Positions 783-61,081 of a DNA stretch of 64,000 bases are shown piece by piece (within the stretch, counting starts at the first letter, position 1; each line of letters starts with the position of its first letter). Under the pieces are notes generated by a model. That model was not told where the DNA came from. It was given only the letters and a program-made list of their open reading frames with translations, and ran no database searches. Origin of the DNA: Mytilus californianus (taxonomy: Eukaryota); NCBI RefSeq assembly GCF_021869535.1, contig NW_026262685.1, positions 372,001 through 436,000 of the forward strand, read 5' to 3'. A program made the position numbers and the translations under genes.

Positions 783-3700
783 CAATATTTGGTATCATTT
801 GTATGACTAGGAATATAACTCCACCAACATTGCTACCGAGTGTCATCAGCAGGTTAGTGGTGCCCTCTGGAACCGGATATGCTGCTTCACACGCCATCTC
901 AAAGAACAGTGGCAAGGTTGATGTCAGGAACATTGTTCCCATTATTATTGATGCATATAACATAACTATGGAGAAAAATGGTTATTTGAAAGTCAAAACG
1001 TGAAGCATGCATAAAAAAGGTTCCATACTATGTCATCATGGTTCTTAGCGTTAATCAATCAGAAAAATGTGTATGGCAATGTTAAATTCAAAGGTGATTG
1101 AAATTTTTGATGAAAATCTAATTGTGTCTTATTTACTTTATTGTTTAAATGGTGTTTTTTTTTTTATATATATTAATAAGATTATTCTCTTGATATAGTC
1201 AAATCCTTTACATTCGCTCAATTTAATGGAAGTTAGTCTTACTGGATACAAGAACAAAAGTTTCCGAATTGACTTGCATGTCTGTATATGGACGTTATCT
1301 TATCATGTTTGAAAGCACCAGCGCGATAAATATTTAAAAACGATTTATATTGTTAGCAACTGCGGACTCGGTTATCCATTTATTCATAATCCAAACTTAC
1401 ATGTAGAACTGTGAATAACACCTTCAACGAGGAATATAAACCATACAAAACACCCGGATGCACATATGTACAGAAATAACAACAATAATCTCATGTGTCG
1501 AGAAAATATATCAGAAAATCTGAAAAACATCAAAGAAAGAATTGTAGAATCATTTTTACGTGTTCAAACTACCTGGCAGCCTATATCAAATACAATAGTT
1601 ATTCCTTAATATGTCACTAGTAAATGAGGGGCTCTTATCGCAAAAAACAATTACGACAATAATTTCATGATTGGTTGGTAGTTGCTTAACGTCCACTGGT
1701 AAATATTTAATGCATTTTCAATACGATCGACATTAATTGATCATAAGTTATATTGAAATGTTCATGACTTAAAAGAGTATTTTTTTCATAATTTCTTTTG
1801 TAAAAGTAACTTCCTGAGCACCCGAGTTCATCCACAGTATGTTTCTGTTTCGGTTTCCATTCCTCAACCCTTAAAGTTTTCTGTTTACCGTGTTTAGCCA
1901 TGATGTTGTCTTCAACTTATAGTTTTTAATTGACTCCTTGGAATCTCCTCCCTCTTTTTTTACAAGAAACGTGACAATGACGCTAATAATAACATCACAC
2001 AAATGTAAAAACAATAGTAACAATTTAAGAGATTAATGTTAATATTGAATGTTATTTGTTTTGTGTAATATGACTTTTTACTTACTTAGCAAAAACAAGT
2101 GATGCAAGACATCCTGCGATTAACGAATAAAATCCAAGCCACCCGGCTTCATCCTACAAAAGTTCAGTGTTTAATATTAGAGTTTTAAAATAATCCCAGC
2201 CACCAGGCACTGTTCTACAAAAGTTCAGTGCCATAAGAGTTATATAAATTCCAAGCCGCTCTGCTTTATCTTACAAAAGTCCAGTGCCTTTAAAGTTATA
2301 TAAAATCAAAGTCACCATGCTCTGTCCTACAAAAGTTTAGTGCCATAAGAGTTATATAAAATCCAAGCCACCCATATCTGTCCTACAAAAGTTCAGTGTC
2401 TATGTATGTTGGCGTTTGTTTTTATAGCAGTTCAGTGTTTATGCTGTTCCGTTGTTTTCCTCTAATAGTTGATGTGTTTCCCTCGGTTTTGGTTTGTGAC
2501 GCGGATTTGTTTCAGTTAAATCGATTTATGACTATTGAACAGCGGTATACTACTGTTGCCTTTATTCATTAGAGTTATATAAAATCCAAGCCATCCTGCT
2601 CTGTCCTACAAAAATTCAGTGCCTTTAGAGTTTTATAAAATCCAAGCCACCCTGCTCTGTCCTACAAAAGTTCAGTGCCATTAGAGTTATATAAAATCCA
2701 AGCCACTCTGCTCTGTCCTACAAAAGTTCAGTGCCTTTAGAGTTATATAAAATCCCAGCCACCCTGCTCTGTCCAACAAAAGTTCAGTGCCATAAGAGTT
2801 ATATAAATTCCAAGCCGCTCTGCTTTATCCTACAAACGTTTAGTGCCTATAGAGTTATATAAAATCAAAGTCACTCTGCTCTGTCCTACAAAAGTTCAGT
2901 GCCATTCGAGTTTTATAAAATCCAAGCCACTCTGCTCTGTCCTACAAAAGTTCAGTGCCATTCGAGTTTTATAAATTCCAAACCGCCTTGCTCTATCCTA
3001 CAAAAGTTCAGTGCCATTAGCGTTTTATAAAATCCAAGCCACCCTGCTCTGTTCTACAAAAGTTCAGTGCCATAAGAGTTATATATATTCCAAGCCGCTC
3101 TGCTTTATCCTACAAACGTTTAGTGCATATAGAGTTATATAAAATCAAAGTCACTCTGCTCTGTCCTACAAAAGTTCAGTGACATTCGAGTTTTATAAAA
3201 TCCAAGCCACCCTGCTCTGTCCAACAAAAGTTCAGTGCCATTAGAGTTAAATAAATTCTAAGCCACCCTGCTCTGTCCTACAAAAGTTCAGTGCCTTTAG
3301 AGTTATATAAAATCCCAGCCACCCAGCTTGCCTACACAAGTTCAGCGTCATTAGAGTTATATAAATTCCAAGCCGCCTGCTCTTTCCTACAAAAGTTAAG
3401 TGCCATAAGAGTTTTATAAAAAACAAGCCACCCTGTTCTGTCCTACAAAAGTTCAGTGTCATTAGAGTTATGTAAAATCCAAGACACCTGCTCTGTCCTA
3501 CAAAAGTTAAGTGCCATTAGAGTTACATAAAATCCAAGCCACCTGCTCTTTCTTACAAAAGTTCAGTGCCATTAGAGTTATATAAAATCCAAGCCGTCTG
3601 CTCTGTCCTACAAAAGTTCAGTGCCATTAGAGTTATATAAAATCCAAGCCACCTGCCCTGTCCTACAAAAGTTCAGTGCCATTAGCGTTTTATAAATTCC

Positions 3701-6700
3701 AAGCCACCCTGCTCTCCCCTTTACAAAAATTCAGTGTCATTAGAGTTATATTCAATCCAAGCCACTCTGCTCTGTCCTACAAAAGTTCAGTGCCATTAGC
3801 GTTTTATAAATTCCAAGCCACCCTGCTCTCCCCTTTACAAAAGTTCAGTGTCATTAGAGTTATATAAAATCCAAGCCGCCTGCTCTGTCCTACAAAAGTT
3901 CAGTGTTATTTGAGTTATATCAAACCCAAGCCACTCTGCTCTTGCCTATAGAAGTTAGTGTTATTTGAGTTATATGAAATCCAACCCACCCTGCACTGTC
4001 CTACAAAATTTCAGTATCGTCAGAGTTATATAAAATCTTATATAAAATCTTATTCACCCTGCTCTAGATCTGTCCTATACAAATTAAAGTTCAATGTCAT
4101 TAAAGTTGTGTACCGACGTACATACTCGATTTTTTTTATTTAAGGAATGACTGTAATGTTTTTTCTGTCTATGAAGAATTAAAATCAAAAATGTGATGCA
4201 CACTGAATATTACAGTTTTCGTTACTTTAACAAAGAATGGAAAAAAATATATAAAACGATAAAATTTACGTGAGTTGATTCTTTTATCATAGAAAAAGGT
4301 TGACAATGTTTTCAGATCAAATGGCCGTTGTATGAAATTCTAAATTTTTTATTTTTTTTAAAATGTGTGTTCAATGCATTGCGCCAAAAATACCATGTTG
4401 TACGAGTTAATAGATGTTCAAACTGAGCTTTTTACTCGAATACATAGCATAAAGTCTTTGGACTTTTTCGAGTTTGTGGTTCATCGATAAACATCTTTAA
4501 CACCTTATTTAATGCTACTGATATATAATACTGTGTAGATACCTCTGAAATATTGTGTGGCTTTAAAATAACATCTAACACTCCTTGCCAACAACCAAAT
4601 ACACCTTGTGAAACTCCAAACGTCAGAAAAATCAACCAGAATTTTACATTTCTGGAAAATAAATGTCATAAATACATACTAGTATAAAACTGAGTACGGC
4701 CTCCTCTGAACGTGTGAAGGTCCTTGCAATGTACTAGTATTGGCTAAACTACACACATACAACATGCGTTATAGAAAGATTGACAAAGATCAAAGAATTT
4801 GTAAATTTTGTTCTTATAATTCAATTGAAGAATGTAATAATTTCAAAAAGCTAAATACAGAAACCAGATTTATTTTTGCTACATTCTTGTGAAAATGGAG
4901 AAATATACAACACTGTGGCTTTAATTTGTCATAAATGTTTTACAATAAGAAAACAACTACTATAGCTCCATATAATCATAAGCATTATCGTTATTGTTTT
5001 TTGTTTCTTGATTTTTGTTTGTATTTGTTTTTTACTTATGTCTATTTGTAATCATTATATGTAACTTGCCCTTTATGGGCTAATAATTGGTTTAATAAAA
5101 TATTTGTTTTCGTATTCGTATTTGCACAACCCGTCAAATATCGTTTCTTTACCAGTAAAAACCATTTTCCAATCGGGATATCACATCTTCACGGTGATGC
5201 TGTTTTTAGAGTTCAAAAATTTAGATACGATCCATGTGATCATTTGAATACACTTTTTCTTAAAGATTATCAAATTTACACTATAGTAAGATCTTTGAAT
5301 ATTGTCTTTATTAGGACTGACACTGTTTTTGTTTTTAATAGCTTAAAACATAACTAAATATGTAAATATGGCACTCTTATGGTCCAACATCCTATCGATA
5401 CTGTTTATAACGCCTACATGTTACTTGTTTTGAATTATCCCTGAAGTAAATGCGTGTACATTTACTCTTAGATTGGTATTGTGTTTCTTTTTGTTAGTTG
5501 ATGTTGGCTTCATGTCGATCTGATGCGCTATTTTATGATAAACGGATTTCAGAACATATTGTGTCAAGCTCTATAAGTCGTTCAAAGTTTTAAAAAGTTG
5601 TGAAAAAAATCATACTGACAATCAAAAATCTGCCATGTTTCCATATTGGACATGCGCATGAACATGATTGTGAAGGTGTTAAACTTATGTTTAAGATCGT
5701 CAACCTCCCTTTTTAATCTGAAGCAGATACATTAAAAAACAAGAAAGCACTAAACTCGACAATAACGGAATAATAGACAAACTAGCAAGACTATTATTAA
5801 CAAAATATGCAATATGTTTTGTTTACTACTTCAATACACTATCTAGATCACATGTTTGATCGATTGATTTGCCCAGTCGCAAATATTTCTTGCATATTCA
5901 GGACGATCAGATAACTTATTTTCTAGAATTTAAAGTAATTACGAGACTATGAAATTAATTATATCATTCATATATATTAAAGTAGGCAAAAGACTTATTA
6001 TACCAATTTTGTTCGCACGAAACATGAATTTTTAATACCCTTCATCTGGTACACATGGGGCAAAAGGTTTGGTAAGCCAAATAGAAAATATTTTAAGAAT
6101 TGCATAATCTGTAAAGTGGATTATAATCTAGAAATTGAAACAATTGACCATTTCTGACAACCTACCTTATAAGAACTTTAATACCAGAACTAAAATCTAA
6201 ACGTCCCACTGACGCTGATAGTGTGGGTGGTAGTTTCGGCTTTGCCGGGTAGTATACTAACATCAAGAAAAAAGCAGCACCGACAAAGCAAAGATCTGTA
6301 AAAAAAAACACGAAAACAAGATAATAAGGCAAAACTCTGCAAAACTCTTTAATCGACTGTTATGAAATTTGTATACAAAGTTATATTCGAATGAAATAAA
6401 AGGTAATATAATTTATTTTTTCAATCTAATTTTATTTTCATTGTTTTGTTTAGAATTAAGTTTCTTATACTTACAGTAAATCATGTAACTATGGATATCT
6501 TTACGTTCAGCTGTTATCACTGTTTCTATAATGATAAGTATATTGTAAAAAGAATAGAAAGTTTTTTTAAACAAAACTTTCAGAACTTAGCAGATATTTG
6601 ACAACCTAAATGTAGAACGTTTCTTAAAATTTTCACTACTAAAGTTATTGAATCATAAAAAGTGATGGAATTTTCTAAAGTGTTAATTGTATACAAAATA

Positions 6701-9700: not shown

Positions 9701-10800
9701 AAAGTCCCCAACATGAAAAAATATGAAACTATTTAATTGAAAAAACTAACGACATAATTTATTACAAAACAATTAACGAAAAACAAATATGACAGACATG
9801 AACCAACGACAACCACTGAACTACAGGCTCCTGTCCACTATATCAAATTTATGAAGATTATATACCGTTTCTTTTTTATCAAGTGACCTATAATTACCAT
9901 CCATTTGAAGATATCAAAATATGTACTCAACATTTCTATGCGAAAAAAGTTAAAAAAAAAAGTTTATTGTATATTGGTTTGCTGCCAACCATTGCAAACA
10001 AATCAAAGACATAAGTATCTTTCCTTATCATCCACGCCGTTGTATAAAAGTACTATAAACTATTATGTATAATTACCACGTGACGTATGATGGATCTGTT
10101 GTAAGACATCGTACAACAGCACCTAAAAGTACCAGGAATGTAGCTACTAAAGATGCAACTCGGATACCTGAAAAAGAGTCAAATATAATATATTCATCTC
10201 CACTTGTTAAATGTTTTATGTGTTGTTTGTGACAGGACAGCAATTACAAATAAATCCACCACACCTACGGTACTGGAACCATCATTTAGCTAAATAAAAT
10301 TACTGAAGTAAAACCTGCATATACTGTTATTCCTATCAATAACTTGAGAATGACCAAATTACATAGGACACAAATAATATGTTACAATTGTATATAGTTT
10401 ATATATGCAGTAATCATTTGAAATAACACCAGTATATATCATATCAATATTTACCTTTCTTTTCTATCAGCCAAATAAATGGGAGGGTTGACAGAATCGA
10501 TGAAATAGGTCCCCATGCCGTAAGCAATGCTATATCTGAATCTTTCCAACCGAATGCGTCCTCAGTTGTAGCTGAAATGGGTCCATAAATGTTCCATGAT
10601 CCACCTTGAGACATAGCACATAGAGAGAATACGACAAGAACATACCAACGACGTTTGTAAACTTTGGTTCTCGGTAGCGCCTCGTCTGTGTTTATTACAA
10701 CATTCTGATTGCATTTGTCGTCAATAACAGAAACTGTTTCTGTGTAAACAGCACCTGTATTATCACTATCACATAGGAGAGGCTTACTTTCATGTTCCAT
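783..10800 (-). CDS. SLC49A4: SLC49A4/DIRC2-like lysosomal MFS transporter, paralog A (3'-partial, last exon off the left edge)
   Basis: Exons on the minus strand: 10455-10800, 10077-10167, 9006-9169, 8508-8571, 7063-7100, 6475-6525, 6166-6295, 4543-4651, 2086-2153, 1401-1519, 783-965. All have GT-AG ends and join in frame (phases 1,2,1,2,1,1,2,0,2,1,1). Motifs MEHESKPLL, KRRWYVL, GQLLNGLGGP, WFPADERTTATA, YYPAKPKLPP and FEMACEAAYPVPEG match human SLC49A4 as I recall it. No WENW-type terminal exon was found in 1-782. Confidence 0.92.
2128..4105 (-). repeat. 56-bp tandem array (about 32 units) made of paralog A exon 9 splice acceptor plus exon start
   Basis: Minus-strand unit ATATAACTCTAATGGCACTGAACTTTTGTAG|GACAGAGCAGGGTGGCTTGGATTTT versus the real junction CACTGAACTTTTGTAG|GATGAAGCCGGGTGGCTTGGATTTT. 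Period 56 measured from 2641 to 2697. Confidence 0.95.
2400..2566. mobile_element. About 165-bp interspersed repeat inserted in the 56-bp array
   Basis: It interrupts one unit (gttcagtgt|...|cattagag). It ends in the imperfect hairpin AACAGCGGTATACTACTGTT plus GCCTTTATT, and the same end recurs at 21784-21820. Confidence 0.65.
7543..7676. mobile_element. Fold-back element centred on GAGC-GAA-GCTC
   Basis: Perfect 24-bp inner arms (7571-7594 and 7619-7642) plus imperfect outer arms. Confidence 0.75.
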
Positions 10801-13642: not shown

Positions 13643-14070
13643 GTGATTGATTGATTGTTGGTTGCTTAACGTCCAGTGACAAATATTTCATGCATGTCCA
13701 GGACTGTAACAAATTACTGATAAAACAAAAGGTAGGTCCTGTAATAGAAGCAGTCATCACGAAGGTCGGGAACTTTTGGACTGCTACTGGTAAATGGGGA
13801 TATATTGGATACACAGCAATTTTGCCTTGCAACAGGCCATATACGGACCCATCAAAGATTTATTGCAAGGTTATTTACGTGAGAGGGCGTGACACTCTCT
13901 TCACACGAGGCATCGGATTTAACGTCCCCATTCTGACCGAATGTGGCTGGAACTTGTACATCCCGCACTGCCGAACGGAGGCCTCACTTTTGCAAGGGTT
14001 TCACTGCCGGTCGGAAGAAGACATAAGTTACCATATTTCTTTTCCCCAGCCAACCTTAGGGGTCCTTTGT
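13643..14070 (-). mobile_element. SINE-like element with (CAAT)n tail
   Basis: GC-richer island ending in a TGAT microsatellite. The tail TTGCTTAACGTCCA..AAATATTT..ATGCAT recurs at about 1670-1715 and 5870-5905. The central GGGGACGTTAAA motif resembles a Nin/Deu domain (from memory). Confidence 0.5.
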
Positions 14071-17866: not shown

Positions 17867-20800
17867 CTAATCCACTTTAATCTCAGTTTCATCGATTTCA
17901 AGTCTATTATAACGTTCCTTAAGGAACGCAAGGACTGGTATACAAGATGCAATAGCTCCTATCAGACACCAATTTTCCCATGATGAACCTAAAGTTAAAA
18001 AGAAGTTTCATTGTAAATATAATACTCATATTTGCAAAACACAAATACGTAAATTGATTTAAAGGAACTAAATGTGATGTAAGCCATCGCTGAAAACGTC
18101 AAGTCATGTGACGAAATTAACCAGGATTATTTTAAGTCTGATTTGAGACATTTGTGACCTTTAACAAAAACAATATTATCAATATGATTGTAATTACTGA
18201 TTAACAAACTGCTTTCATGTATATTAAATCTACTGGGTTTCCTCTAGTCTTCACAAATTTATTCTTAGTGATGGTTTTAATGGTTGTCCTGGAATGTTTT
18301 ATACTTCTATTTGTCTATTTAAGAAGTTAACATTGAAATTCAATGAGTCATACTTTTCCTTGATCAATATATAAATGGCTTACCAATATTAGGAACCATA
18401 AGTACTATAAGGAACACTAGACCACCAATGTTGTTAAGTAACGTTAGTACTAAGTTTGTGACTCCTTCTGCCACAGGGTAACTCGCTTCACAAGCCATCT
18501 CAAAGTATAATGGAGAGGTGGAACCAAGCATCATACAGAATATTATTATGGAGGCATAAAGTTGAACTGAAATTGGAAATTGAATATTTTAAAAAATTAA
18601 GAATAATTTTAATAAAACGTTGTTTTTTTTAGATTTTAAGTTTCACGCTTCACTGACCTCCTGACATATAGTTGTATTCATGGCGTAGATACTACAAACG
18701 GTTCTGGCGACTGTGCAATCCTAAACTGATAGAACCTCTTAACATTCCATATTGTTACAATATTATTTTTTTTCATTTCATCACCACGTCACTAGTGTCA
18801 ATTCAACTTTTGGACTTCCAAATTTTTTTATTCGAGCGTCACCGATAAGTCTTGAGCAGACATGCTGAATGAATGTCAATCAAACTGCCACCAACAAAAA
18901 CAGATATTTCACGCAGTCGTCTATATATGGTTTTCAACAACATTATGTGTATAAATAATATTAATTATTTCAGTGAATTTATAAAATCTCTAATCAGTTC
19001 AGTGATTATAAAAAAACCCTGAAATTTCAAGGATTTCACAAAATCCCTGATTTTACAAATTCACTGTAACATATTTACCACATGTCCAGATCTATATCAC
19101 CCTTAATCAATGTTGACTCTACATCAGATTTTGCATAAGAATTCCGGATAAATACAACAAGTTAATTTTCTGTATCTTAATATTGTTTTAATGTACTCTC
19201 ACTTTAGTTATCTTTTGCCATTGCTAAAAAGCAGTGATTCCATCGCAGACAAATGAGTAAGTATGTTAAAGGCCTTCGTATTATTTCTTACTGAATTAAA
19301 CAGTTTGTAATCATGGTGAATTTTAGTATTCATTGTTTGACATACAATAATTTTTGAAACTGGTTACTTATTATACTTGTTACAGGTATTGTAAGCTATT
19401 AAAAAACAAATTTTTATGGTTTTTTTTGAAATTTTAGTTTATAAACATTTTTGCAAAAATATGCAAATCAGCTGATTACTTTAAGTAAAATAAATACCAC
19501 AAACTCTCTCGACTTCTTACAACAAAGATTATTAAAATGTATTGTTAACTAAGAACGTATAATTTGCAATTTTCTTATTTAAATAAACGTTTAAGGTTTC
19601 TTTAAAAAAGTACTTACTTTGAGAATTAGGAATGGTTCCCTGTATAAGAAATGTAAACCATACTAAAGACCCAGCAGCACCAACATATAGAAACAGTAAA
19701 AACAATCTCATGTGTTTTGAAAATACATCAGCAAATCTGTTCAAAGATGAAACACGAATATAGAAAAAACAGTCGTTCTGTTACTAGACAAATTAAGTAA
19801 TATCTTGTCAAATATAAAGTGAACAAAACAAATGTGTTGACACCCTGTCTGATTCGATCAAATCGCCTTTCACAACAAAATGGCTAATGATTGATGCTTG
19901 ATAATCGTTGAAAATCACGTGTATTCTATTTGAAATACGCAAATTTTCATGAAACTTTCTTTTTTTCAATTTCCTATAGACATCACGTGGGACAAGTGTT
20001 TCTTTGAATAGTTGGAATTTTATTGGAAGCCAATCATTCCTTGTTTATTTGTATTAATATGAGTTTCGATTTTGCATAGTAACTAGTAAAAGAATGAATT
20101 TATAACTAATTACTGTGATCTTATCTATAACTAAAATTTACATCCCACATTTTCCGTTTGAATTCAATTGATATATTCTTCCAAGTATACAAAAGGAACC
20201 AATAAACTGTTCCTTCATACATGATACTGAAATAATAGAATCTGACGACATATTTGTATGCATATCAAAGTTCAATTACTAATAAGTAATGAATTTACCA
20301 ACTGTATTATTGTATTTGACATGCATTTCTAAACTCATGTAACATGCAAAGCATACAGCTCATTCTGAGATCAATCAACACGTTTTCTGAATAATATAAT
20401 GTAAACTATCAGTCGTCGGTTACAGTATGAACCTTTTTGCCGAATGAGCACTCGAATTAATGACTTATAGTATTATTATAAACCTCACAATACAGTATGC
20501 AGAGGAGCTGATATTTTGGAACATTTTCGTACAAACACAAGCGATTGAACAATTATATTTTTTCTATTTACAATTATCTATTTTTGAATAAGGAATTCAG
20601 TAATTGATCCAGGAAATCAGTATTGAACCTACCTTGCGATAGCTAACGTTACAATGCATCCTGCTAATAAAGAATAAAATCCTAACCAACCAGCTTGTTC
20701 CTGCAACAAAATAAGTTTGATTTCGCTTTCCAGTGAATAAAAAGCACTTGGAGTGTCCAACTAATTAAATTAATTCTTTAAGTCTCAACAGTGCCTAACT

Positions 20801-39644: not shown

Positions 39645-40500
39645 TGTTCCGTCAGTTACTTTGTTCCGGCGGAACTTTTCAACTAGTTATTTCGTTCCGA
39701 TGGAACTTTCCAACTAGTTGTTTTATTCCGAGTGCAGTCGAAAAGTTCCGGAAAAAAGTAGCTAGTTGAAAAGTCCCGGAACAATGTAGCTAGTTGAATA
39801 GTTAACCGTANNNNNNNNNNNNNNNNNNNNNNNNNNNNNNNNNNNNNNNNNNNNNNNNNNNNNNNNNNNNNNNNNNNNNNNNNNNNNNNNNNNNNNNNNN
39901 NNNNNNNNNNNNNNNNNNNNNNNNNNNNNNNNNNNNNNNNNNNNNTGTGACTAGTTGATAAGTTCCGTTTGACTTTTGTGGCTAGTATCTTTGTTCCCCT
40001 TTGAAAAGGTTCAAAGATAATATGTTGCGCTTTTACTTTGCATCAATTCTCCAAATGGAACTTTGTGACTGGTTGATAAGTTCCGTTGGAACTTTTGGGC
40101 TAGTTTGTTAGTTCCGGTTTTGACTTATTTGCCAAAGAGGAACTATGTGGCTAGTTGATAAGTTCCTTTTGACTTTTGTAATCAGTATCTTGGTTTCCCT
40201 TTGAAAGGTTCAAATATAATATGTTGCGCTTTTACTTTGCATCAATTCTCCAAATGGAACTTTCTGCCTGGTTGATAAGTTCCGTTGGAACTTTTGGGCT
40301 AGTTTGTTAGTTCCGGTTTTGACTAATTTGGCAAAAAGGAACTTTCTAACTAGTTGATATGTTCCGTTGGAACTTTTCAACTAGTCACTTTGTTCCGATG
40401 GAACTTTTAAACCAGAGGAAGAACAAAGTAACTAGTTAATAAGTTCCTCCGGAACTTTTCGGCTAGTTAGTTCTTTCCGCCCGGAACTTTCCAACGTCGG
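39645..40500. repeat. Degenerate GGAACTTTT/CTAGTT repeat region flanking the assembly gap
   Basis: Short subunits in both orientations, plus a near-duplicate block of about 180 bp (about 39946-40130 and 40140-40320). Confidence 0.7.
39811..39945. other. Assembly gap (135 N)
   Basis: Run of n characters. Confidence 1.
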
Positions 40501-48520: not shown

Positions 48521-48552
<32 letters not shown>

Positions 48553-50237: not shown

Positions 50238-53200
50238 TTAGTTTGAATCTAAGTTTATCTCAGTTTCGTCTATCTCAAGTCGGTTGTAATTTTCTTTAAG
50301 AAACACTAAGACAGGTATACAGGCTGCAATAGCTCCTAACAGGCACCAGTTCTCCCATCTTGTCCCTGTAAAGGATACCTTTTATTTTGTGCTGAACATT
50401 CTTTTCGGAAAGTTTAGGCAATCTAAATACAATTTGTCATTTTATTTAAATGTCTTTGTAAATGTGTTTTATATATATATTTCCAAGTCGATATATCTTA
50501 TCAAATGTTTATGCTTAATCAGAATGGTGTATCTTGGTAATAAAGCAATGCCATCATCGATGTTAATTTCATCACAGATATACCAGCTGGTTTCAAATTT
50601 TGGACTTCAGATGCGCGTCTCGTCTACAAAAGACCCATCAAAGACGCTCGAATAAAAAAAACGTTAAATTGCAAAATAAAGTAAAAAATTGAAGAGCATT
50701 GAGGACCCAAAATTCCAAAAGGCTTTGCCAAATACAGCTAAGGTAATCTATTCATCTGGAAAGGCCTTGGTGTAATCCCTTAATGTGATAGTATGTACAG
50801 GTCAGTTTTTCTTGAGTTCTATACTTGAGGGTCTGGATGGGGTCTACAGAATAGAGAATAATGGACAAAATGTGCAGAATAAAGAGCTGAAAATATAAAG
50901 ATTAAAGAAAAATAGGGCAAAAAAAAAGAATAGAGAATAATAGGGTGCTAAAATATAAAGAATACAGAGTAACAGGCAACATTTTTAAAGAATAGAGAAA
51001 GATGGCCTAAAAAATAAATACAGAAATGAAGGGACACCTATCCACACCCTCTATACTTTATAATTTTTGAGATGTAAAATTTGTCATCATTTGAGTGCAC
51101 AGGTAAAATAATAACTTCAGTTTCTTACCAATATGTGGCACCATCTGTACACCTAAGAATATTAAGCCTCCTATATTGTTAACTAATGTTAATACTAAAT
51201 TAGTAATGCCCTCTGCTACAGGATAGGTTGCCTCGCAGGCCATCTCAAAATACAGAGGCGACGTGGATCCAAGAAACATGGATAGCAATATGATAGACAT
51301 GTACAACTGCACTGAGAATTAAATGATAAATAGTGTCAAGAGTTAACTTAATAGTTGTATAAAGTAATATAATGGATTATACAGACGGAAGTATAGCAGA
51401 GCGGAAAGAGAGACCATACAAAACACAATATTTTTTGTACATCTATAACAGTGGTCAATTTTATACTGTCCTATAAGATACGTTCCCTGTCATTATTTCT
51501 ACTGTAGTACAGTAGTTGTATTTCTAAATATGATTTAATATTTATCGGACTTGTGGGAAAAAACGTGTAATTCTATAAGAAAGTATATCAACTAGCATAT
51601 AGTTTGGAACCTAATTTTAATTTTACACTCTCGGGTCCCATTGTCATTTTTTCATGATTATTTTTGGTAGATAATACCGCTAATGCTATATTCTTGCCGC
51701 AAACAGTCTTAACTGTGTACTGAGTTATTGAGCGATACTAAATTCTTCAATCTGGTACTCAATCAGAATGCTCAAATCTATTATACAAACAGCTTTCTAG
51801 CTAAATTTCATCTGTGAAAATAAATTTCTTTTTTGTTTTGTTTTGTTTTTTCTTTTTATTTTACCTGTAGATGAATGGATGGTTCCCAAAAGAAGGAATG
51901 TAAACCAGACTAGACTACCACATCCACCAATATATAAGACTAGTAGGAATAAGCGCATATGCTTTGCAAAGATGTCTGCAAATCTACAAAGTGTATTTCA
52001 AATATGATATTCTAAAAGGATCACACAGAACGTAGGCAAAGTAAGTGACAATAAATCCAAAGAAATAGTTAGAGCTATAGTCAAGAGAACCGAAAACTAC
52101 AGTTCTATAAACACTAAAAAGCGTGTACTCTTCAACAAGCTTAATATTGTACTAGATAGTGGCCGGTATATATAATCATCATTGACATTTTTTTCTTTCA
52201 CAAAAACAAGCCTACTGTCTCAACAAGAGACCAATTTTGACATAACAGAAAAATATCAAAGGTCTTTATAAAGTCAAGCCTTTGTTATGACATACTTAAT
52301 CCCTTTGACTTATATAAGATAGAAAAGAAAAACTTGGCTATTCATAGATGTCATATACCGTACATGCATCTTAGAGTTATATAATAAATGAATCAGTTCA
52401 TATGGATTCTATAACTGCTTCTTCAAAATATCAACTGAAACCAGGTCAGAGATAAACTTACTTAGCTACAGCCAGTGTCACAATGCATCCTGCTACTAAT
52501 GAATAAAATCCCAGCCATCCTGCTTCATCCTAACAATATATATAATGAAAAATTATTAATATAACCTAGAATGTAAATTTCAAAAGCATGCGTAGTAGGA
52601 AACCTTTGTCTATTTGATCAAAACATATTCACAAAAATACCGAAAAAAGGGGGTCAATAAAATCTGGAAAGATCAAACGCTTGACTAAATCAACCAACGA
52701 AACGAATGGAAGACAACTGTAATATTCCTGAAATCACTTACAGTTACTCTGAGACCAAATAGTGCTATTCCTGAAATCACTTACAGTTACTCTGATACCA
52801 AATAGTGCTTTGTGTAAGAGATTATTTTGTGTTATATCAGATACAGCAGAATATATTTTGATTTTCAAATAGCTGTTTAAATGTGTTGGTCGAGACCATT
52901 AGATAACCAATTATGTAACATTGATGTTTTCAACCTATTGTATTGCCAAACTATTAGACGGAATATTTTGAAAATGTGGCACCTAAAAGGAGTCTTGCGA
53001 ATAATATTTTTTTCCGATATCTTTTTATTTTCGTTTTTTGGCAACCTATTATTTTACAAGATTAATTTGGGTATATGGAAATATTTATACTATGCATACA
53101 TATTTTTATAACAATTCTATTATAATGAAAAGGAATGTATGTAAGGTGATACCTGTTCATATATATATATATATATATAGATAGCAAATTTGTTTCTTCT

Positions 53201-56200
53201 ATCGGCGGGATTTGAATCTATGCTTCTGTTACATTGTGGCCTGCAGTATAGACAGCAACCTCGAGCACTCGGCCAACGAGGCTAATAAAGCTATACTACT
53301 CATCAACACTATTAGTATTTGATATACTTTTCCGTCAATGATTAAATACCTCAGATATTCCATGAGGCTTAAGTATGACATCAAGGACACTCTGCCAGGA
53401 GTTGTAAACTCCTAATGACACACCATACGTTAGACAGATCATCCAAAACTTCACGTTTCTGTTAATAAAAATTCAGTAAACGGATTTAAAACTAGAGACG
53501 ATAAATATCTACATTAATTGTCTATGTTTCTTTCAGCAGAATTAGCAGAAATCCAAATCCAAATATATGATAAAGGATGAAAAGAATTATGACATTTTCA
53601 CGGCATAAGGGTGCTCTTTTATGTACCCTACTCAGGTGACAGAAATAAATTATGGAATGACATTGGATGTACGAGTTCAATATATTGTTTTGAATTATTT
53701 GTGAACAGATGCAGTAAATCTATGTTAAGAAAGATGAAACAATACGGTTGCTACGGAAAATACTATGATAGTTTCTGCATGGTGAATATCTAAATCCAGA
53801 AAAGCGCTACTAACAGACTAAGTTAACGAAGAGTTATTTTCATATAATTTAGACGAGCTCAACAAATGATAGATATGACGTATATATTGTAAAGAACTTA
53901 TATTTAATTCTTTTTCGGAATTTTTGTTTTTCAATGTTCTTTTGATTAATCATTTGGCCTCCTAACTGTTTTGATTCGAGCGCAACTGATGAGTCTTATA
54001 TAGACGAATCACGAGTCTGGCGTTCAAAATCATATGGATCGATGCCGCTGCTGGTGGACAATATCACCATCCGAGTAATCAGCACTTCTGTGCTGACATG
54101 GCATATCTTTAATTAATTCATTTTCTGTAAATTTACTGTTTATAAAATTTTGAATTATTCGAAATACTAACTTAAAGGTATTTCAACCCTAGATATTGAT
54201 AGCTTTAGTTGTATTTAGTAACTTTTCGGAACCTGTGGTTTTCAAAGCTTTTCAATTTTGTATTTGATAAGGCCTTCTAACTGTTTTGGTCGGAGTGCCA
54301 CGAATGTGTCTTATGTAGTCATGACGCGCGTCTGGCGTACCAAATTATATATATGGTAGCGCTTTGGTCAGTTTTTTATTATAAAAAGAAGCAAGGTCAT
54401 AAACAGTGAGTAGTATCGCCTATATTGGCACAAATACTACTTATATATTAAGACTGTAGTTATAGATAACATGACATATCTAATGGTTTTACCTCATTAA
54501 TTGTTTTACCCCTTCTCCAAAATCTACCCTCTCCACAGAAGCTGATACAGTTGGTGGAAGTTTGGGTTTATCTGGGAAGTATATAATCACAAGCAGCAAA
54601 GCTAACACGCACATGCCACATTCTGTTCAACAAAACGAATATTTAAACACAATCAGCCTTAACAGCAGCATATTTCAAATCAACAAGAAAGTAATATAAA
54701 AAACGTTTGATATTGATGAAATGAGGGATACAGCAGATACAATTAGGTCTGATCCATATCTTGACTTACATAAAGAAATCGGTGGTGAAGTACTTTCATG
54801 TAGTTGGGTCATTATAAAAAAAAAACATGCAAATATATGTTATTTGGTCTTTTTAAGTCACAGACATGACAATATATCAAAATAACACTTGTATATGTTA
54901 GATATGAATGTTTTGTGATACATTATATACAGTTTACAGTATGAAATGTTATAAAAACATCCTTAATGTTTTCTGAAACCCTTGGATATAGCCAGAATAA
55001 ACTGTTATTTTTTTTCTATATTACCTTTCAGACATGAAATAGGACTATTATTCATATTCTTTGTTATTAGGATTTATCACTATTTATTGCATTTTGATAT
55101 ATACAAACATTTTTTAATGATTTGGAAAGTGTATCATTTTTTTTAAGTCAGTGGTGTAACCCAAAGACAAATTGGTTGGGTAAGAGTTATCTTTCTCAAG
55201 ATTTCAGCATTTACAATAGTTTCTCCCCTAGCAATGTTACCTGTAAGCATGTAATTCAGACGACACAAAAAATCTATGTTGGAAATTATTGAAAAAATCT
55301 TAAAACTGAGTAAGTAAAAACTACATCGTAAATAAAATTAGTGCCCATAGTGCACCTTTATAAAAATCATTTTCCGAAAGATTTCCGAAACTTTGATTTA
55401 TGAAAAGATATTGATTGTAGAAACATGCACCAGGAACAACATATAAAATAGGGGAATGCATGGAGCACTTAGTTCAACTAAATCTAAAAATACACTTGTA
55501 CGTCATTGGTGTTACTGTCAATGGTGAGACCACTTTAATAAAGTAACACCATTGATCAGTTTAGTAACAACAATGAATATATTATGACAATCAGCAATTT
55601 TTTGTGTTTTTTCATGTTTAACAACCGAAACATCATATTACTTATGAAATATAATACTTATTTAACAATGTTTTAACAATATAATGTATTACCTATACCA
55701 AGTTTTCACAAACTGGTGTATGCTGGTAACACCAAGGACACCATTTAGTAACACTATTGACATTTTTAGTTATTGATGTTATGATATTTAACTCGGGATT
55801 TTTTAGCCTAAGAATTACTTTTTTTTTTTTCTTTTGCTTAGTGTTCTTTAATTGTTTTGTGTTCAGTACTTAATAAAAGTAAAATTAGAACTTTGTTGTC
55901 AATGGTGATACTTTTGTGTAATTGTAGTAACTGATGGGTCAGTGGTGTTACTATATAAAAATGCAATAATTTTTATTTTCTATTAACAAATAATTTAATT
56001 TTGGATGTAACACGTCTTCTGATTGGCTGAAAGTGTTTTGTCTATCAGCTCATAGACATAATTTTGTCATGTGACCGTGACGTCACCAACGGTTTTTTTT
56101 AAATTTACTCCTTAAAAATGGAATTTAGAATTAAATTATAAGGAATGACTGTAATATTTTTTCTGTCTATTCGAAATAACCTAAAAAATGTGGTGCACAC

Positions 56201-59200
56201 TTTTAAGTAACCCGCTACGCGGGTTATTCAGTGTGCACCACATTTTTTATGTTATTTCTTCATAGACAGAAAAAATATTACAGTCATTCCTTAAATGAAA
56301 GTTTATTTAGGCTGTATACGAAGGATTAGGCATTATCTAATCATTCAGTCTTACACATTTAACATATATTCAGTTTTAGTGTATACTTTAGTATAAACAA
56401 CAGCCATAATTAGGACAGCTATGTTTTTTACAACAATTTATTCTGAAATTTATGTTCAAATAGAATGCATACCTATAAAATAATGTCAATAAGTAGTAAT
56501 TTAACCCTTAACAACAAATTGGAATAGTTAATTGGTATTTACAAATATTTTTTAATAAATAAATGCATGTTTTTATTGGTAACACCATTGACATGATTCT
56601 ATCAAAGGATGACCAAAAATTGTTAAAATTGAAGGAACTCCTAATTTTCCCCATTGCATATTTCTGAATATAGTTGCTACCATATTTCAAAATAGCAGGA
56701 CATATTTTAATTTTTAAAACAATGACATCAGTTTCCCGAAATTTCCCTCATCGAAATATGCATGTTTTTTTATAATGATCCAGCTACTAATTTAAAGTTC
56801 ATTCTGAATGGTAAACGGTCGCCATCTTAACTTCTTTTTTTTACCGTGAGCAATTCCTAAAATTTGTCGCACTCACAATTCTGTTAAAGATTGAATATGT
56901 ACGTTTCCATGTAGGAGCGCACAATAACAAAAGTATATGTATTTTTTTAAGTTTACCTTTAAATCTATCAGTACTCACCCCAATACATAAGTTTCATTAT
57001 TTCTTGTCGCTCATCAAGTACTCTTGATCCTGTAAAACAAAGCTGGCTTTAGCAGATCATCCAGCCAGGCTTTTTATATATGTAAGTGGATTATCCTAGA
57101 TTGCTTCAAGTATCATAATAATATACATTTTCAGACCACATATACAGACAAACTAAACCCACTATTGAAAGACAAAATAAACTGAAAATTAACAGACAAA
57201 CTAAACCAAAAATTTAAAACAAACAAACTACGTAATAAAAAAGAAAAACATATTCTGTTTTATTTCAAATAAAATTCGTATAAACACATTAGATTTATGA
57301 AATTACAAGATTTTGAAATCATTCAAAAAAACATTTTTTTTTCTCTCTTATAACTAATTTTATGTAGCCTGTGCTAATATATAAATAACACATAGCTGAG
57401 AGGGTGATAGAGCAGATTGTTACCCCGAGAAAACATTGTCAACTGAGGCGAAGCCAAGGTTGACAATGTCTTTTCGAGGGGTAACAATCTGCTCTATCAC
57501 CCTCTCAGCTATGTGTTATTTAATTTATTATACTGAATGTTCTGTTATTACTGTCGATTAAATTTCAAACTATGACGTCTTGTACATAACAACCATCCGT
57601 ATTTAATAAAGCGCACACTTGATCAAGCATCTCCGTGAAGGGTAATAGAGTAAATTAACACCCTCGTATAAGCCAATCAAAATATTGCATTTTTACGTGA
57701 AGTATAATAATAACTAATGTTATTTAGCCTGTGATGATAACTAATGTTATGTAGCATGTGATAATAACTAATGTTAGTTAGCCTGTGATAATAACTAATG
57801 TTATGTTGCGTGTGATAATAATTAATGTTCTTTAGCCTGTGATAATAACTTATGTTATGTAGCCTGTGATAATAACTAATGTTATTTAGTCTGTGATAAT
57901 AACTAACCATTCGTGATGCTTACGTTGTAAAAAGAACTGTAATTCTTGATATTGCTGAAAGGTAAAATAGCAAATGCATTCATGCCCTAAGTGATCAGAA
58001 TAAACCAGAGGTATTGTGAGATGCGCTAACAAAATGATACCCCGCCCCTTCCAAAGACCTAAAATAATTCGGACCAAAACAAAATAGGAGGTTCACAATA
58101 GCCTTATACGGTTAATATGTTGAGATTACTTCTTTACATTACAGGGAGGGGTTTAGGAGGAGAAACGGACACAAATATGAACAATGCTGTGCGGATATGA
58201 CGATGCCAGTGTCCATATCGATTCAAAGTAAACACCAAAAATTATTCAGATGAAGAAATGATATAGGAGTACGATTCTGTTAAAGTTTGACTAAAATCTG
58301 TCAAGTGGTTCAAGAACAGAAATTTGTTGGTACAAAGGTGGGACAGAAGGACGAACGAACGAACTCCCTCCATCAGTATAGAATGTCTGCTTTAGAAAGC
58401 AGGGTATAATAATGTTCTGATATAACCAGCAGTCATATAGGACTTTTACTTTCTTACTAATCAATGGAAGAAATGCACTTTGAAAATCAAATTATTAAGA
58501 ACGGATTTAGGCATGCAAAAACGTCACTTTTTGTTCGATGAATGCGTTACATACATTCACGCCTTCATTTTATAAAGAAAGAAAGAAATGTTAAATCTCA
58601 TCATCCGTTGATAGACAAATCAAATGGTTAGTTAAGTATAAGTTGGCTCTTACATTATTTTACAATTCCTAATGTATGTATAAGTTCTACTGAGGTAGAT
58701 GCAACCACTGTAAGAACAAGAATCTTCTTATATAATAGTAAAGGAAGGATATGGTGTATCAATTCATGGCACGAAATCACTACGCGCACATGAAAAAAGA
58801 CAAAAATAAAGGTACAGCGCTTTTATAATTTCTTAGTGATTGAGTCCAAGTAAATAGGTTGTTTCGTCAATAGTTATGGTAAATGTATTATACATGTAAC
58901 TAATCATCGGGAACATGAATAATTGTTGCAAGGGTTCCAAATGCGTTTTGCCGATGAAGGAAATTCCTAAACTTTGAATCAAATATAAACACATTTTAAT
59001 TTGGTCGAAGACCAAAATCAATAGTGAGCTGCAAACACAATTAAAGCAATTAAAAAAACAAAGCAGGAATGTTAGAAAAATTATGTAATAGATTTACCTT
59101 GCATTATAAGCTGTAGCATTATTAGTGTCTTGTTTGTCAGGCACGAAGTATGGTCCTATAAATAAATATATATCACCAATATGGAAAATACCGAACCTTA

Positions 59201-60118
59201 TTCTAAGATAAAATATGGATCATTTGATGAATTTTTCTTATATTTCTACGAATTAAACCGTAAAAGTTTATAGAATTATTTAATTTCATGTTCTATTCTG
59301 GAGAGGTAACATCTTGTGTTTCTTATTTCATTCTAAAGCGATAAAATCTTTACATTAGGATAGAGCTTTTTCTGTGAATTATGTTGTCTAATCATGACAT
59401 GTCTGCTTACCTATTATAAACGATATACCGACTCCAAGACTGTTCAATATGGCGCTGATGGCTGTGGATGTTGTTCTTTCATTCACAGGAAACCAGCGAG
59501 CAGAGAGTGCAGGTGGAACTCCCATGGCAACGGGACCAGCTAAACCATTCAGCAGCTGTCCAATATTAACTGTCCTTAAACCAGCAAAATTTGCGATATT
59601 CTATGAAAATTGTTACCAACAGTAATTTGCTCTGCTGAATTACATTTTTATTTTATGGATAATTGTCAATATGATTATGTATAATACTTTTAAATATTCA
59701 AATTCCGCTTGGTTGTCTAACTTTTTGATTGGACTATGGGAGTGAAACAATAAAACTGGAAGTAGACATGCCTCTTGAATTATTGTATAGGTTACTCAGT
59801 TGACCCAACAAATTACGATATAAACCTCGAATATCATTTGGTTGGTATAAAAGCACAAAAAACACAAAAATCTCGACTATGAAAAAAACCATTATGTTTA
59901 CATAACAAAATACAACAAAAAAAACAAAGCTTAAAACAAAACAAAAAAAATGAAAATATAAATATTAAACAACTGTGATTACATTGTATAAGACTATGTA
60001 TAAATTAACACCAAAAGATCGTCTTACCATTTAACATAATCAGGATTATCGGTAATACATCGTACGCCAGCTCCGGCGGCTACCATAACTGCAGCTATCA
60101 ATGTGGCAGATCTTAGCC
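50238..60118 (-). CDS. SLC49A4: SLC49A4/DIRC2-like lysosomal MFS transporter, paralog C (5'-partial, exon 1 off the right edge)
   Basis: Exons 2-12: 60028-60118, 59411-59574, 59098-59155, 57908-57954, 56979-57029, 54493-54622, 53350-53458, 52462-52529, 51865-51983, 51129-51311, 50238-50365 (TAA). Exon 2-11 lengths equal those of B (91,164,58,47,51,130,109,68,119,183) and the frame is open. Confidence 0.92.
50827..51051. mobile_element. MITE, same family, with perfect 7-bp TSD TATACTT
   Basis: TATACTT|GAGGGTCTGGATGGGG...CCTATCCACACCCTC|TATACTT. Confidence 0.8.
53900..54360 (+). mobile_element. Degenerate retrozyme-like tandem: 315-nt monomer between two type I hammerhead motifs
   Basis: Motif 1 (53978-54024): CTGATGA-GTC-TTATATA-GAC-GAAT-CACGAG-TC-TGGCG. 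Motif 2 (54293-54340) is more decayed. The GTC sites at 54017 and 54332 are 315 nt apart, and the monomer is homologous to the reverse complement of 29480-29745. Confidence 0.65.
56139..56293. mobile_element. Fold-back element centred on CCCGC-GTA-GCGGG (minus strand)
   Basis: Perfect outer arms of about 32 bp (TAAGGAATGACTGTAATATTTTTTCTGTCTAT) and inner 19-bp arms. A half copy lies at 4140-4210. Confidence 0.8.
57383..57521. mobile_element. Fold-back element centred on GGC-GAA-GCC
   Basis: Arms 57383-57443 and 57459-57521, with the outer 44 bp perfectly complementary. Confidence 0.8.
57710..57907 (-). repeat. 27-bp tandem array (about 7 units) starting at the paralog C exon 5 donor
   Basis: Minus-strand unit (G/A)TTAGTTATTATCACAGGCTAAATAAC. 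Only the first unit starts with GT. Confidence 0.9.
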
Positions 60119-61081
60119 CTGTAACAGACCAATATCAATGTGGCAGAACTTAGCCCTGTAACAGACCAATATCAATGTGGCAGATCTTAGCCCTGTAACA
60201 AACCAATATCAATGTGACAGATCTTAGCCCTGTAACAGACCAATACCAATGTGGCAGATCTTAGACCTGTAACAGACCAATATCAATGTGGCAGATCTTA
60301 GGCCTGTAACAGACCAATTTCAATGTGGCAGATCTTAGCCCTGTAACAGACCAATATCAATGTGGCAGATCTTAGCCCTGTAACAGACCAATACCAATGT
60401 GGATGATCTTAGTCCTGAAACAGACCAATGTCAATGTTGCAGATCTGAGCCCTGTAACAGACCAATATCAATGTGGCAGATCTTAGCCCTGTAACAGACC
60501 AATATCAATATGGAAGATCTAAGCCCTGTAACAGAATAATATCTTAGCCCTATAACAGACCAATATCAATGTGGAAGATCTTAGCCCTGTAACAGACCAA
60601 TACCAATGTGGCAGATCTTAGCCCTGTAACAGACCAATACCAATGTGGCAGATCTTAGACCTGAACAGACCAATATCAATGTGGCAGATCTTAGGCCTGT
60701 AACAGACCAATATCAATGTGGCAGATCTTAGCCCTGTAACAGACCAATACCAATGTGGAAGATCTTAGCCCTGTAGCAGACCAATATCAATGTGGCAGAT
60801 CTTAGCCCTGTAACAGACCAATATCAATGTGGCAGATCTTAGCCCTGTAACAGACCAATATCAATGTGGCAGATCTTAGCCCTGTAACAGACCAATATCA
60901 ATGTGGAAGATCTTAGCCCTGTAGCAGACCAATATCAATGTGGAAGATCTTAGCCCTGTAACAGACCAATATCAATGTGACAGATCTTAGCCCTGTAACA
61001 GACCAATATCAATGTGGCAGATCTTAGCCTTGTTATAGACCAATATCAATGTGGCAGATCTTAGCCCTGTAACAGACCAAT
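60096..61081 (-). repeat. 37-bp tandem array (about 27 units) made of paralog C exon 2 splice acceptor plus first 23 exon nt
   Basis: Minus-strand unit TTGGTCTGTTACAG|GGCTAAGATCTGCCACATTGATA. The innermost unit is the real exon 2 start (60118). One unit near 60535-60550 is shortened. Confidence 0.96.

What the first reader, a model, noticed from the sequence alone, without database searches (positions are those of the whole stretch)
2086..61081. Recurrent splice-site-anchored tandem arrays across an SLC49A4 gene cluster
Seen: three unrelated tandem arrays (56, 37 and 27 bp) each begin exactly at a splice junction of a paralog. Two are amplified branch/acceptor + exon-start cassettes (A exon 9, C exon 2), and one begins at the +1 G of a donor (C exon 5). 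The homologous junctions in the other paralogs have no array, so the events are independent. Inference: either exon junctions are hotspots for local amplification in this genome (slippage, microhomology-mediated repair, R-loops, small circular DNA), or the arrays act as copy-number-variable splicing rheostats that divert pre-mRNA to NMD. I know of no named system matching this.
Basis: partly seen in the sequence, partly recalled or inferred. Interest (0 to 1): 0.85.

Follow-up and report, generated by a model that had tools for sequence, protein, structure and literature searches.

The report
Splice-junction "mirage" minisatellites in mussel transporter genes
In three neighbouring California mussel transporter genes, short pieces spanning or touching an exon-intron junction have been copied in tandem up to about 30 times; this repeat type is already known ("mirages" in amphioxus, the human F7 intron 7 repeat), and the RNA available shows only the true splice site in use.

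Summary
The window is Mytilus californianus (GCA_021869535.1) and carries three minus-strand SLC49A4/DIRC2-like genes.

- **The two acceptor arrays.** The 56-bp array (2127-4105) and the 37-bp array (60096-61081) are built from the intron tail plus the first 27 or 23 nt of A exon 9 and C exon 2. They end inside the exon, not at the junction.
- **The donor array.** The 27-bp array (57707-57906) starts at intron position +2 of C exon 5. It contains no exon sequence and no decoy GT.
- **Origin.** Paralogs and M. galloprovincialis/M. trossulus orthologs are single-copy at these junctions. Direct repeats in the single-copy state (GATA 37 bp apart; TTAGTTAT 33 nt apart) account for the 37-bp unit exactly and place the start of the 27-bp array.
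- **Age and RNA.** The 56-bp array is shared with M. coruscus. Nine M. coruscus transcript assemblies splice across it to the true acceptor.
- **Untested part.** Gene C had no RNA coverage, so decoy use there is untested.
- **Known kind.** This is a named phenomenon, the "mirage" minisatellite. This scan has already reported at least a dozen such arrays elsewhere in this genome.
- **Hotspot and rheostat ideas.** Enrichment at junctions is suggestive but not shown here. The rheostat idea has no support.
- **Assembly gap.** The N gap (39811-39945) is intergenic and does not touch the arrays.

The parts
2127..4105 (-). 56-bp minisatellite in intron 8 of paralog A. It has 31 decoy copies of 'intron tail + first 27 nt of exon 9' plus the true copy. 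About 27 decoys keep an AG at or within 2 nt of the homologous place.
   Evidence: TRF; unit table; sequence; the same array is in M. coruscus.
2399..2566 (-). 168-bp dispersed element inserted into the 56-bp array, four decoy units upstream of the true exon.
   Evidence: 96.4% identical copy at the same place in M. coruscus (L011 11831-11997). Partial copies lie in other introns (window 21783-21820, L012, L013, L014, L015).
2086..2153 (-). Paralog A exon 9 (68 nt, DEAGWLGFYSLIAGCLASLVFAK). Its first 27 nt are the last, partial unit of the array.
   Evidence: 100% match to cDNA L001 1204-1273 and to RefSeq protein P0185 residues 84-106.
4543..4651 (-). Paralog A exon 8. Its donor (GTATCT) is joined to the true exon 9 acceptor at 2153.
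60096..61081 (-). 37-bp minisatellite in intron 1 of paralog C. It has 26 copies of 'ttggtctgttacag + first 23 nt of exon 2'. Of these, 25 keep the AG and 10 are identical to the true exon start. A 111-bp higher-order period is also present.
   Evidence: TRF; unit table; sequence.
60028..60118 (-). Paralog C exon 2 (91 nt, G-LRSATLIAAVMVAAGAGVRCITDNPDYVKW).
   Evidence: It is homologous to A exon 2 (10167-10077) and B exon 2 (37578-37488), neither of which has an array.
57707..57906 (-). 27-bp minisatellite (7.4 copies) starting at position +2 of intron 5 of paralog C. The units contain no exon sequence and no GT at the donor-homologous place.
   Evidence: TRF; sequence.
57908..57954 (-). Paralog C exon 5 (47 nt, NIKNYSSFYNVSITN). 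The donor is G|GTTAGT, with the +1 G at 57907.
   Evidence: The frame chains e4-e5-e6, and the M. galloprovincialis ortholog ends the exon at the same ITN|G.
52462..52529 (-). Paralog C exon 9. This is the homologous junction and it has no array.
20633..20700 (-). Paralog B exon 9. This is the homologous junction and it has no array.
39811..39945 (.). Assembly gap (N) in an intergenic position between B and C, inside a tract of tandem repeats. It is not part of the finding's arrays.

Best explanation
These are 'mirage'-type splice-junction minisatellites.

**How they arise (inferred).** A short segment that happened to span, or in the 27-bp case abut, an exon-intron junction was duplicated in tandem by slippage or repair between short direct repeats. 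The copy number then grew and drifted by unequal exchange or replication slippage.

**Why they survive (inferred).** Such arrays persist only because the exon-proximal copy stays joined to the rest of the exon and remains the splice site in use. The other copies sit in the intron as silent decoys. Choice of the exon-proximal site is most simply explained by exon definition: the acceptor nearest the exon body and its donor wins. This step was not tested.

**What is shown here.**
- The arrays have a local origin.
- Direct repeats sit at the unit boundaries for two of the three arrays.
- Each array is specific to one lineage.
- The 56-bp array persists, and differs in copy number, between M. californianus and M. 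coruscus.
- Across the orthologous M. coruscus array, splicing goes to the true acceptor.
For: **Local origin.**
- Unit sequences occur only in their own arrays in the window and in all fetched loci.
- The exon parts of the units are ancestral coding sequence shared with the paralogs.

**Seed mechanism.**
- In single-copy M. galloprovincialis and M. trossulus, a 4-bp direct repeat GATA sits at intron -18..-15 and exon +20..+23. That is exactly 37 bp apart and gives exactly the observed unit.
- In single-copy M. trossulus, TTAGTTAT occurs at intron +2..+9 and again 33 nt on. This explains why the californianus array starts at +2.

**Age and dynamics.**
- The 56-bp array is absent from M. galloprovincialis and M. 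trossulus, whose intron 8 is about 700 and 595 bp.
- It is present in M. coruscus with about 28 copies, against 32 here. Both carry the same 168-bp insertion and a collinear proximal 850 bp at 91% identity.
- All 31 decoys share GACAGAGCA against the true GATGAAGCC. The array has therefore homogenised without the boundary copy, as described for amphioxus mirages (PMC3087553).

**Splicing.**
- Nine transcript assemblies are 99-100% identical to the M. coruscus locus. They join e8 to the true e9 across the array and hold one exon-start copy each.
- RefSeq XP_052103188.1 of M. californianus does the same.

**Generality in Mytilus.**
- C orthologs carry donor-side arrays at e3 (83 bp, 2-6 copies) and e5 (43 bp, up to 6 identical donors).
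- These differ by presence or absence between the two M. galloprovincialis assemblies, and the gene models use the first donor.

**Genes intact.** C e1-e11 chain in frame. The A exons match the cDNA without frame breaks.

**Precedent.** PMC3087553, PMC3902484 and PMC1557585.
Against: - There is no RNA evidence for gene C. A raw RNA-seq run gave zero depth on all C exons, so use of the 24 near-perfect decoy acceptors is untested.
- Assembled transcripts drop rare isoforms, so low-level decoy use in A is not excluded.
- The RNA evidence for A comes from the sister species, not from M. californianus.
- The seed repeat for the 56-bp unit could not be reconstructed.
- Half of the well-expanded minisatellites in these genes sit on junctions. 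A purely random-seed model does not predict this.
- The RefSeq models of A and C lack exons 1-6 for unknown reasons.
Confidence: 0.78

Rival explanations
1. Junction-linked bias. The arrays are mirages, but in Mytilus they arise, expand or persist preferentially at exon-intron junctions. Possible causes are that the selected boundary copy acts as an anchor that cannot be deleted and re-seeds the array, recombination near exons, or transcription/splicing-coupled instability.
For: - In the window, 2 of the 5 minisatellites with unit >=10 bp and >=5 copies span a junction and a third abuts one. The random-seed expectation is 0.17 (P about 0.012).
- In the orthologous loci, which were not picked for this, 2 of 4 such arrays span a junction.
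- The C e5 donor was amplified twice with different unit phases: 27 bp in californianus, and 43 bp in galloprovincialis/edulis.
- Other follow-ups of this scan report denser cases and call them non-random (POLE, ANKS3). I did not check those.
Against: - Counting all arrays, observed and expected agree within about twofold (6 locus-level cases against 2.4-3.7 expected).
- The copy-number threshold was chosen after the fact, and the window was picked because of the arrays.
- Plain direct repeats explain the unit phases.
- The units show no unusual DNA hairpin potential (z -1.4 to 0).
Confidence: 0.15
2. Splicing rheostat. The decoy acceptors divert part of the pre-mRNA into stop-containing transcripts that are degraded by NMD, so array length tunes expression.
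For: - 25 of 26 units of the 37-bp array keep the AG, and 10 match the true site over all 37 nt.
- Every decoy in both arrays leads to a stop. For A this happens within 4-83 codons. For C it follows from reading the unit in frame.
- Each unit holds a plausible branch motif (TTGAT or CTAAT, read from the sequence).
Against: - Nine of nine M. coruscus transcript assemblies, and the RefSeq model, use only the true acceptor of A.
- Amphioxus mirages and the F7 pseudo-sites stay silent (PMC3087553, PMC1557585).
- The arrays are absent from close relatives and polymorphic, as expected for neutral VNTRs.
- The RNA run gave no reads on the stretch of the C e2 array that was laid (60096-60449).
Confidence: 0.05
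3. Assembly artefact. The arrays, or their lengths, were produced by the assembler.
For: The window has an N gap and many repeats. The copy number of the 37-bp array rests on one assembly.
Against: - The 56-bp array is in two independent assemblies of two species, with a shared insertion.
- Units carry many distinct substitutions and a higher-order pattern.
- Contigs of another DNA run (X13) differ from the window at many sites. They still cover the part of the 37-bp array that was laid, and also the e5/array boundary.
Confidence: 0.02

Closest known systems
Amphioxus 'mirage' minisatellites (Adh3, globins BflGb6/BflGb9, troponin C, PGBD5), as described in PMC3087553 and PMC3902484
   Same: - Tandem repeats whose unit spans an exon-intron boundary of the host gene, on either the acceptor or the donor side.
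- Many copies keep AG or GT.
- Normal splicing is kept.
- Copy number varies.
- The array homogenises while the boundary copy stays apart.
   Different: - The host is a bivalve mollusc, not a cephalochordate.
- There are far more copies here (26 and 32, against 2-6 in the globins).
- Somatic instability, reported for Adh3, was not testable here.
- The 27-bp array holds no exon sequence, so it is not strictly a mirage.
Human F7 intron 7 37-bp VNTR (PMC1557585)
   Same: A minisatellite at a splice junction that makes a row of identical pseudo-sites. These stay silent because the exon-proximal site is chosen. The 43-bp e5 and 83-bp e3 donor arrays of the Mytilus C orthologs have the same design.
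   Different: - F7 is donor-side, with 5'-to-3' scanning shown by mutagenesis.
- The two large arrays here are acceptor-side, where the last copy, not the first, must be chosen, and no experiment exists.
- The californianus 27-bp donor array has no pseudo-donors.
Other junction minisatellites reported by this scan in the same genome (WDR7, POLE, ANKS3, RIMOC1, PSMA4, MRPS15, UPB1, WDR44, TFIIB, adenylate cyclase)
   Same: Same genome and same architecture, with the same outcome wherever RNA was available: only the exon-proximal site is used.
   Different: - Those are AI notes that I did not check.
- This case adds three arrays in one paralog cluster, cross-species dating, the seed direct repeats, and presence/absence polymorphism at the orthologous loci.
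Tandem (NAGNAG-type) alternative splice sites (PMC2423196)
   Same: Closely spaced duplicate splice sites.
   Different: NAGNAG sites lie 3 nt apart, are used alternatively, and change one residue. Here the copies are 37-56 nt apart, number in the dozens, and appear unused.

Membership tests
Mirage (splice-junction) minisatellite | Tandem repeat whose unit spans an exon-intron boundary | tested here: met
   The 56-bp unit is 29 nt of intron plus 27 nt of exon 9. The 37-bp unit is 14 nt of intron plus 23 nt of exon 2. The 27-bp array does not meet this: it starts at intron +2 and holds no exon sequence.
Mirage (splice-junction) minisatellite | Unit derived from the host gene's own junction, not from a dispersed repeat | tested here: met
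   The exon parts are conserved in the paralogs. Orthologs are single-copy. No unit copies occur elsewhere in the window or the fetched loci.
Mirage (splice-junction) minisatellite | Many but not all copies keep the splice signal | tested here: met
   25 of 26 copies keep the AG in the 37-bp array. In the 56-bp array, 21 of 32 are in strict register, and about 27 of the 31 decoys if a 1-2 nt shift is allowed.
Mirage (splice-junction) minisatellite | Regular splicing is not disturbed; the authentic site is used | tested here: inconclusive
   Met for the 56-bp array through M. coruscus cDNAs (9 of 9) and RefSeq XP_052103188.1. Not testable for the two C arrays, because the raw RNA run gave zero depth on the C exons and the RefSeq model of C starts at exon 7.
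Mirage (splice-junction) minisatellite | Length instability or copy-number polymorphism | tested here: met
   There are 32 copies here against about 28 in M. coruscus, with turnover in the distal part. The orthologous-locus arrays are present or absent between two M. galloprovincialis assemblies. Polymorphism within M. californianus was not tested.
Mirage (splice-junction) minisatellite | Concerted evolution inside the array, with the boundary copy left out | tested here: met
   All 31 decoys of the 56-bp array differ from the true exon start at 4-9 of 27 positions, and the typical decoy reads GACAGAGCA where the true exon has GATGAAGCC. This is not visible in the younger 37-bp array.
Mirage (splice-junction) minisatellite | Somatic instability (reported for Adh3) | not testable with these tools
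   It needs several tissues of one animal.
F7-type donor pseudo-site VNTR | The first repeat element spans the exon-intron boundary, giving a row of identical donors | tested here: not met
   The californianus 27-bp units read cATTAGT, not GGTTAGT, and hold no exon sequence. The feature is met by the 43-bp array of the M. galloprovincialis/M. edulis orthologs, with 6 and 3 exact donor copies.

The most novel reading that the evidence does not exclude
In Mytilus, well-expanded minisatellites may derive from exon-intron junctions far more often than random seeding allows: half of them in these genes, against a few per cent expected. The cause would be tied to the junction itself, for example a selected boundary copy that cannot be deleted and keeps re-seeding the array, or recombination or transcription-linked instability near exons. 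Mussel genomes would then be a natural library of graded decoy-site arrays for studying 3' splice-site choice and intron gain.
Probability: 0.25. Interest if true: 0.6.

Novelty: new member of a known kind. Interest (0 to 1): 0.3.

Why it matters
**For annotation.** Arrays of near-perfect decoy splice sites can mislead gene predictors. RefSeq models of A and C are 5'-truncated although full 12-exon reading frames exist. I did not show that the arrays caused this.

**For biology.** The two acceptor arrays are natural experiments on 3' splice-site choice: 24 decoys, 10 of them identical to the true site over 37 nt. They mirror the F7 donor model, in a lineage where these repeats seem common and polymorphic. 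If the suspected excess at junctions is confirmed genome-wide, it would point to an unexplained bias in how minisatellites form or persist.

**On its own.** This locus is one more example of a described kind of repeat.

Tried and rejected
- **RNA test of decoy use in C.** The one read-laying run (54450-60449, raw RNA run X16 plus three contig runs) gave zero depth on every C exon. Reads fell only on two high-copy mobile elements. X1 and X17 behaved like DNA. No conclusion on splicing of C is possible.
- **A C-type transcript or full model.** I found no Logan transcript and no full-length M. californianus or M. coruscus model of C. I could therefore not test whether M. coruscus has the 37-bp or 27-bp arrays.
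- **Dispersed satellite or mobile-element origin of the units.** Rejected, because there are no copies outside the arrays.
- **Hairpin-driven slippage.** Rejected, because DNA folding z-scores are -1.4 to 0.
- **Pseudogene decay.** Rejected, because the exons of A and C are intact and in frame.
- **Seed repeat for the 56-bp unit.** It could not be reconstructed, because the intron tail has diverged between lineages.
- **Original Adh3 mirage paper (PMC117041).** It is not held, so I cite it only through PMC3087553.
- **First attempts to chain the C exons.** They failed on my own search ranges, not on the sequence.
Full report
**What the window is.** Bases 1-16484 are 100% identical to GCA_021869535.1 scaffold JAKFGE010000035.1 of Mytilus californianus. 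The sequence is AT-rich (about 31% GC), and about 11% of it lies in tandem repeats (30 arrays). Three paralogous genes lie on the minus strand. They hit Pfam MFS_1, and the sources name their Mytilus relatives SLC49A4/DIRC2.
- A occupies 10800 down to the window start; exon 12 is off-window.
- B occupies 38175-17870.
- C occupies 60118-50241; exon 1 lies just outside, at window-equivalent 64525-64159.

**The N gap, checked first.** The gap (39811-39945) lies about 1.6 kb upstream of B exon 1, inside a tract of tandem repeats. It is intergenic, no frame crosses it, and it is about 18 kb from the nearest of the three arrays. I did not try to fill it. The order C-B-A is the same on M. galloprovincialis and M. 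trossulus chromosomes.

**The observation.** All three arrays are real.
- A exon 9 is 2153-2086, C exon 2 is 60118-60028 and C exon 5 is 57954-57908. These rest on paralog conservation that starts right after the AG, on orthologous proteins, on cDNA and on an in-frame chain of C exons 1-11.
- The 56-bp unit is 29 nt of intron tail plus the first 27 nt of exon 9. The 37-bp unit is 14 nt of intron tail plus the first 23 nt of exon 2. Both arrays therefore carry the junction in every unit and end inside the exon, which corrects 'begin exactly at a splice junction'.
- The 27-bp array starts at intron +2. Its other units read cATTAGT, so they are not donors.
- In the 37-bp array, 25 of 26 copies keep the AG and 10 equal the true site over the whole unit.
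- In the 56-bp array, about 27 of 31 decoys keep an AG. All decoys differ from the true exon start at 4-9 of 27 positions, and each leads to a stop within 4-83 codons.

**Origin.**
- Units occur nowhere else in the window or in any fetched locus.
- In single-copy M. galloprovincialis and M. trossulus, GATA sits at intron -18..-15 and at exon +20..+23. That is exactly 37 bp apart and bounds exactly the observed unit.
- In single-copy M. trossulus, TTAGTTAT occurs at intron +2..+9 and again 33 nt downstream. This explains why the californianus array starts at +2.
- These are the marks of slippage or repair between short direct repeats.
- The seed of the 56-bp unit could not be rebuilt.
- The units show no special DNA hairpin potential.

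**Age and dynamics.**
- Intron 8 of the A ortholog is about 700 bp in M. galloprovincialis and 595 bp in M. trossulus, with no array.
- M. coruscus has the same 56-bp array (about 28 copies) and the same 168-bp dispersed element inserted four units from the exon (96.4% identical).
- The proximal 850 bp is collinear between the two species at 91%, while the distal part has turned over.
- The decoys share substitutions that the true copy lacks. PMC3087553 describes the same exclusion of the boundary copy for amphioxus.
- C intron 1 is 259 bp in M. galloprovincialis and 221 bp in M. trossulus, but about 4 kb here.

**Splicing evidence.**
- Nine Logan transcript assemblies from nine RNA runs encode the same 493-aa protein. 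They are 99-100% identical to the M. coruscus locus and 96.6% to the window.
- They join exon 8 to the true exon 9 across the array, with one exon-start copy each.
- RefSeq XP_052103188.1 of M. californianus uses the same junction.
- For C, the raw RNA run gave zero depth on all exons laid, and the RefSeq model starts at exon 7. Decoy use in C is therefore untested.
- Contigs hide rare isoforms, so low-level decoy use in A is not excluded either.

**More of the same in the genus.**
- C orthologs carry an 83-bp array made of the last 57 nt of exon 3, its donor and 26 nt of intron. M. trossulus has 6 copies and one M. galloprovincialis assembly has 2. It is absent from the other M. galloprovincialis assembly and from M. 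edulis.
- They also carry a 43-bp array made of the last 16 nt of exon 5, its donor and 27 nt of intron. It is present in one M. galloprovincialis assembly and in M. edulis, and absent from the other M. galloprovincialis assembly and from M. trossulus.
- The exon 5 donor has thus been amplified twice, with different unit phases.
- The gene models use the first donor.

**Chance.** I used a model in which a seed duplication of unit length u falls at random, so the expected count is the sum of (u-1) times junctions divided by length.
- Counting all arrays, the window expects 0.8-1.7 junction-spanning arrays and has 2. All six loci together expect 2.4-3.7 and have 6, which represent 4 independent events.
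- Counting only minisatellites with unit >=10 bp and >=5 copies, the window expects 0.17 and has 2 of 5, plus one abutting (P about 0.012). The orthologous loci have 2 of 4.
- The threshold was chosen after the fact, and the window was picked because of these arrays. I call this suggestive only.
- Any array that overlaps an exon and survives must include a junction, because one lying wholly inside an exon would break the frame.

**What is known.** Repeats of this design are named 'mirages' in amphioxus (PMC3087553, PMC3902484). The human F7 intron 7 37-bp VNTR is a donor-side case with silent pseudo-sites (PMC1557585). A search of the held library found no report for Mytilus. This scan has already reported at least a dozen such arrays on other DNA of this genome, and the followed-up ones shown were classed as mirages. 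Those are unchecked notes, and one of them gave me the name.

**Verdict.** The arrays are real, independent, lineage-specific splice-junction minisatellites of a known kind. The rheostat reading has no support, and the hotspot reading remains open. Interest is modest for this locus alone. The open question worth testing is whether junction-derived arrays are truly over-represented in mussel genomes.

Noticed in passing
window 1-11012 and 50241-60118 (plus exon 1 at window-equivalent 64159-64525): RefSeq models of paralogs A (XP_052103188.1, 245 aa) and C (XP_052103212.1, 242 aa) start at an internal Met in exon 7. Intact exons 1-6 are nevertheless present and chain in frame, so both genes look under-annotated.
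   Followed up: partly
window 57378-57652 and 55850-56450: Two very high-copy dispersed elements lie in C introns, with summed contig depth up to about 1,000,000 in a DNA run. The first is palindromic and MITE-like. They were the only places where RNA reads landed.
   Followed up: no
window 54802-56781: A contig of DNA run X13 joins 54801 directly to 56782. This 1.98-kb repeat-rich block in a C intron is therefore an insertion/deletion polymorphism.
   Followed up: no
window 61082-64000: C intron 1 is about 4 kb here, against 221-259 bp in M. trossulus and M. galloprovincialis. Besides the 37-bp array it holds about 2.8 kb of inserted repeats, including a 436-bp x 2.1 tandem repeat (61527-62461).
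   Followed up: partly
L015 4739-5221; L014 8710-8880 and 13556-13784; L018 5070-5255: Donor-side mirages occur in the C orthologs of M. trossulus, M. galloprovincialis and M. edulis: an 83-bp array at exon 3 and a 43-bp array at exon 5. They are present or absent between two M. galloprovincialis assemblies.
   Followed up: yes
L017 6411-6799, L018 6109-6313, L014 14630-14718: An ordinary intronic 36-37-bp VNTR downstream of exon 5 of the C ortholog has 11, 5.5 and 2.4 copies in three assemblies. This shows how fast minisatellites change in these genomes.
   Followed up: no
P0001 (M. trossulus isoform X2), against window 4543-4651 and 2086-2153: One RefSeq isoform of the A-type ortholog in M. 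trossulus lacks the residues encoded by exons 8 and 9. These are the two exons that flank the array-bearing intron in M. californianus and M. coruscus.
   Followed up: no
window 14501-16484 (+ strand): A C1q-domain gene is called between A and B on the opposite strand (gene table of L010).
   Followed up: no
L010 20345-27229 (beyond the window start): A fourth SLC49A4-like paralog (495 aa) follows A on the same strand, so the cluster has at least four members.
   Followed up: no
window 39654-40412 and L014 7125-7274: The tandem repeats on both sides of the N gap share a GTTCCG...GGAAC motif. A similar TTCCGGAAAAGT repeat lies in an intron of the M. galloprovincialis C ortholog, so this may be a dispersed repeat family.
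   Followed up: no
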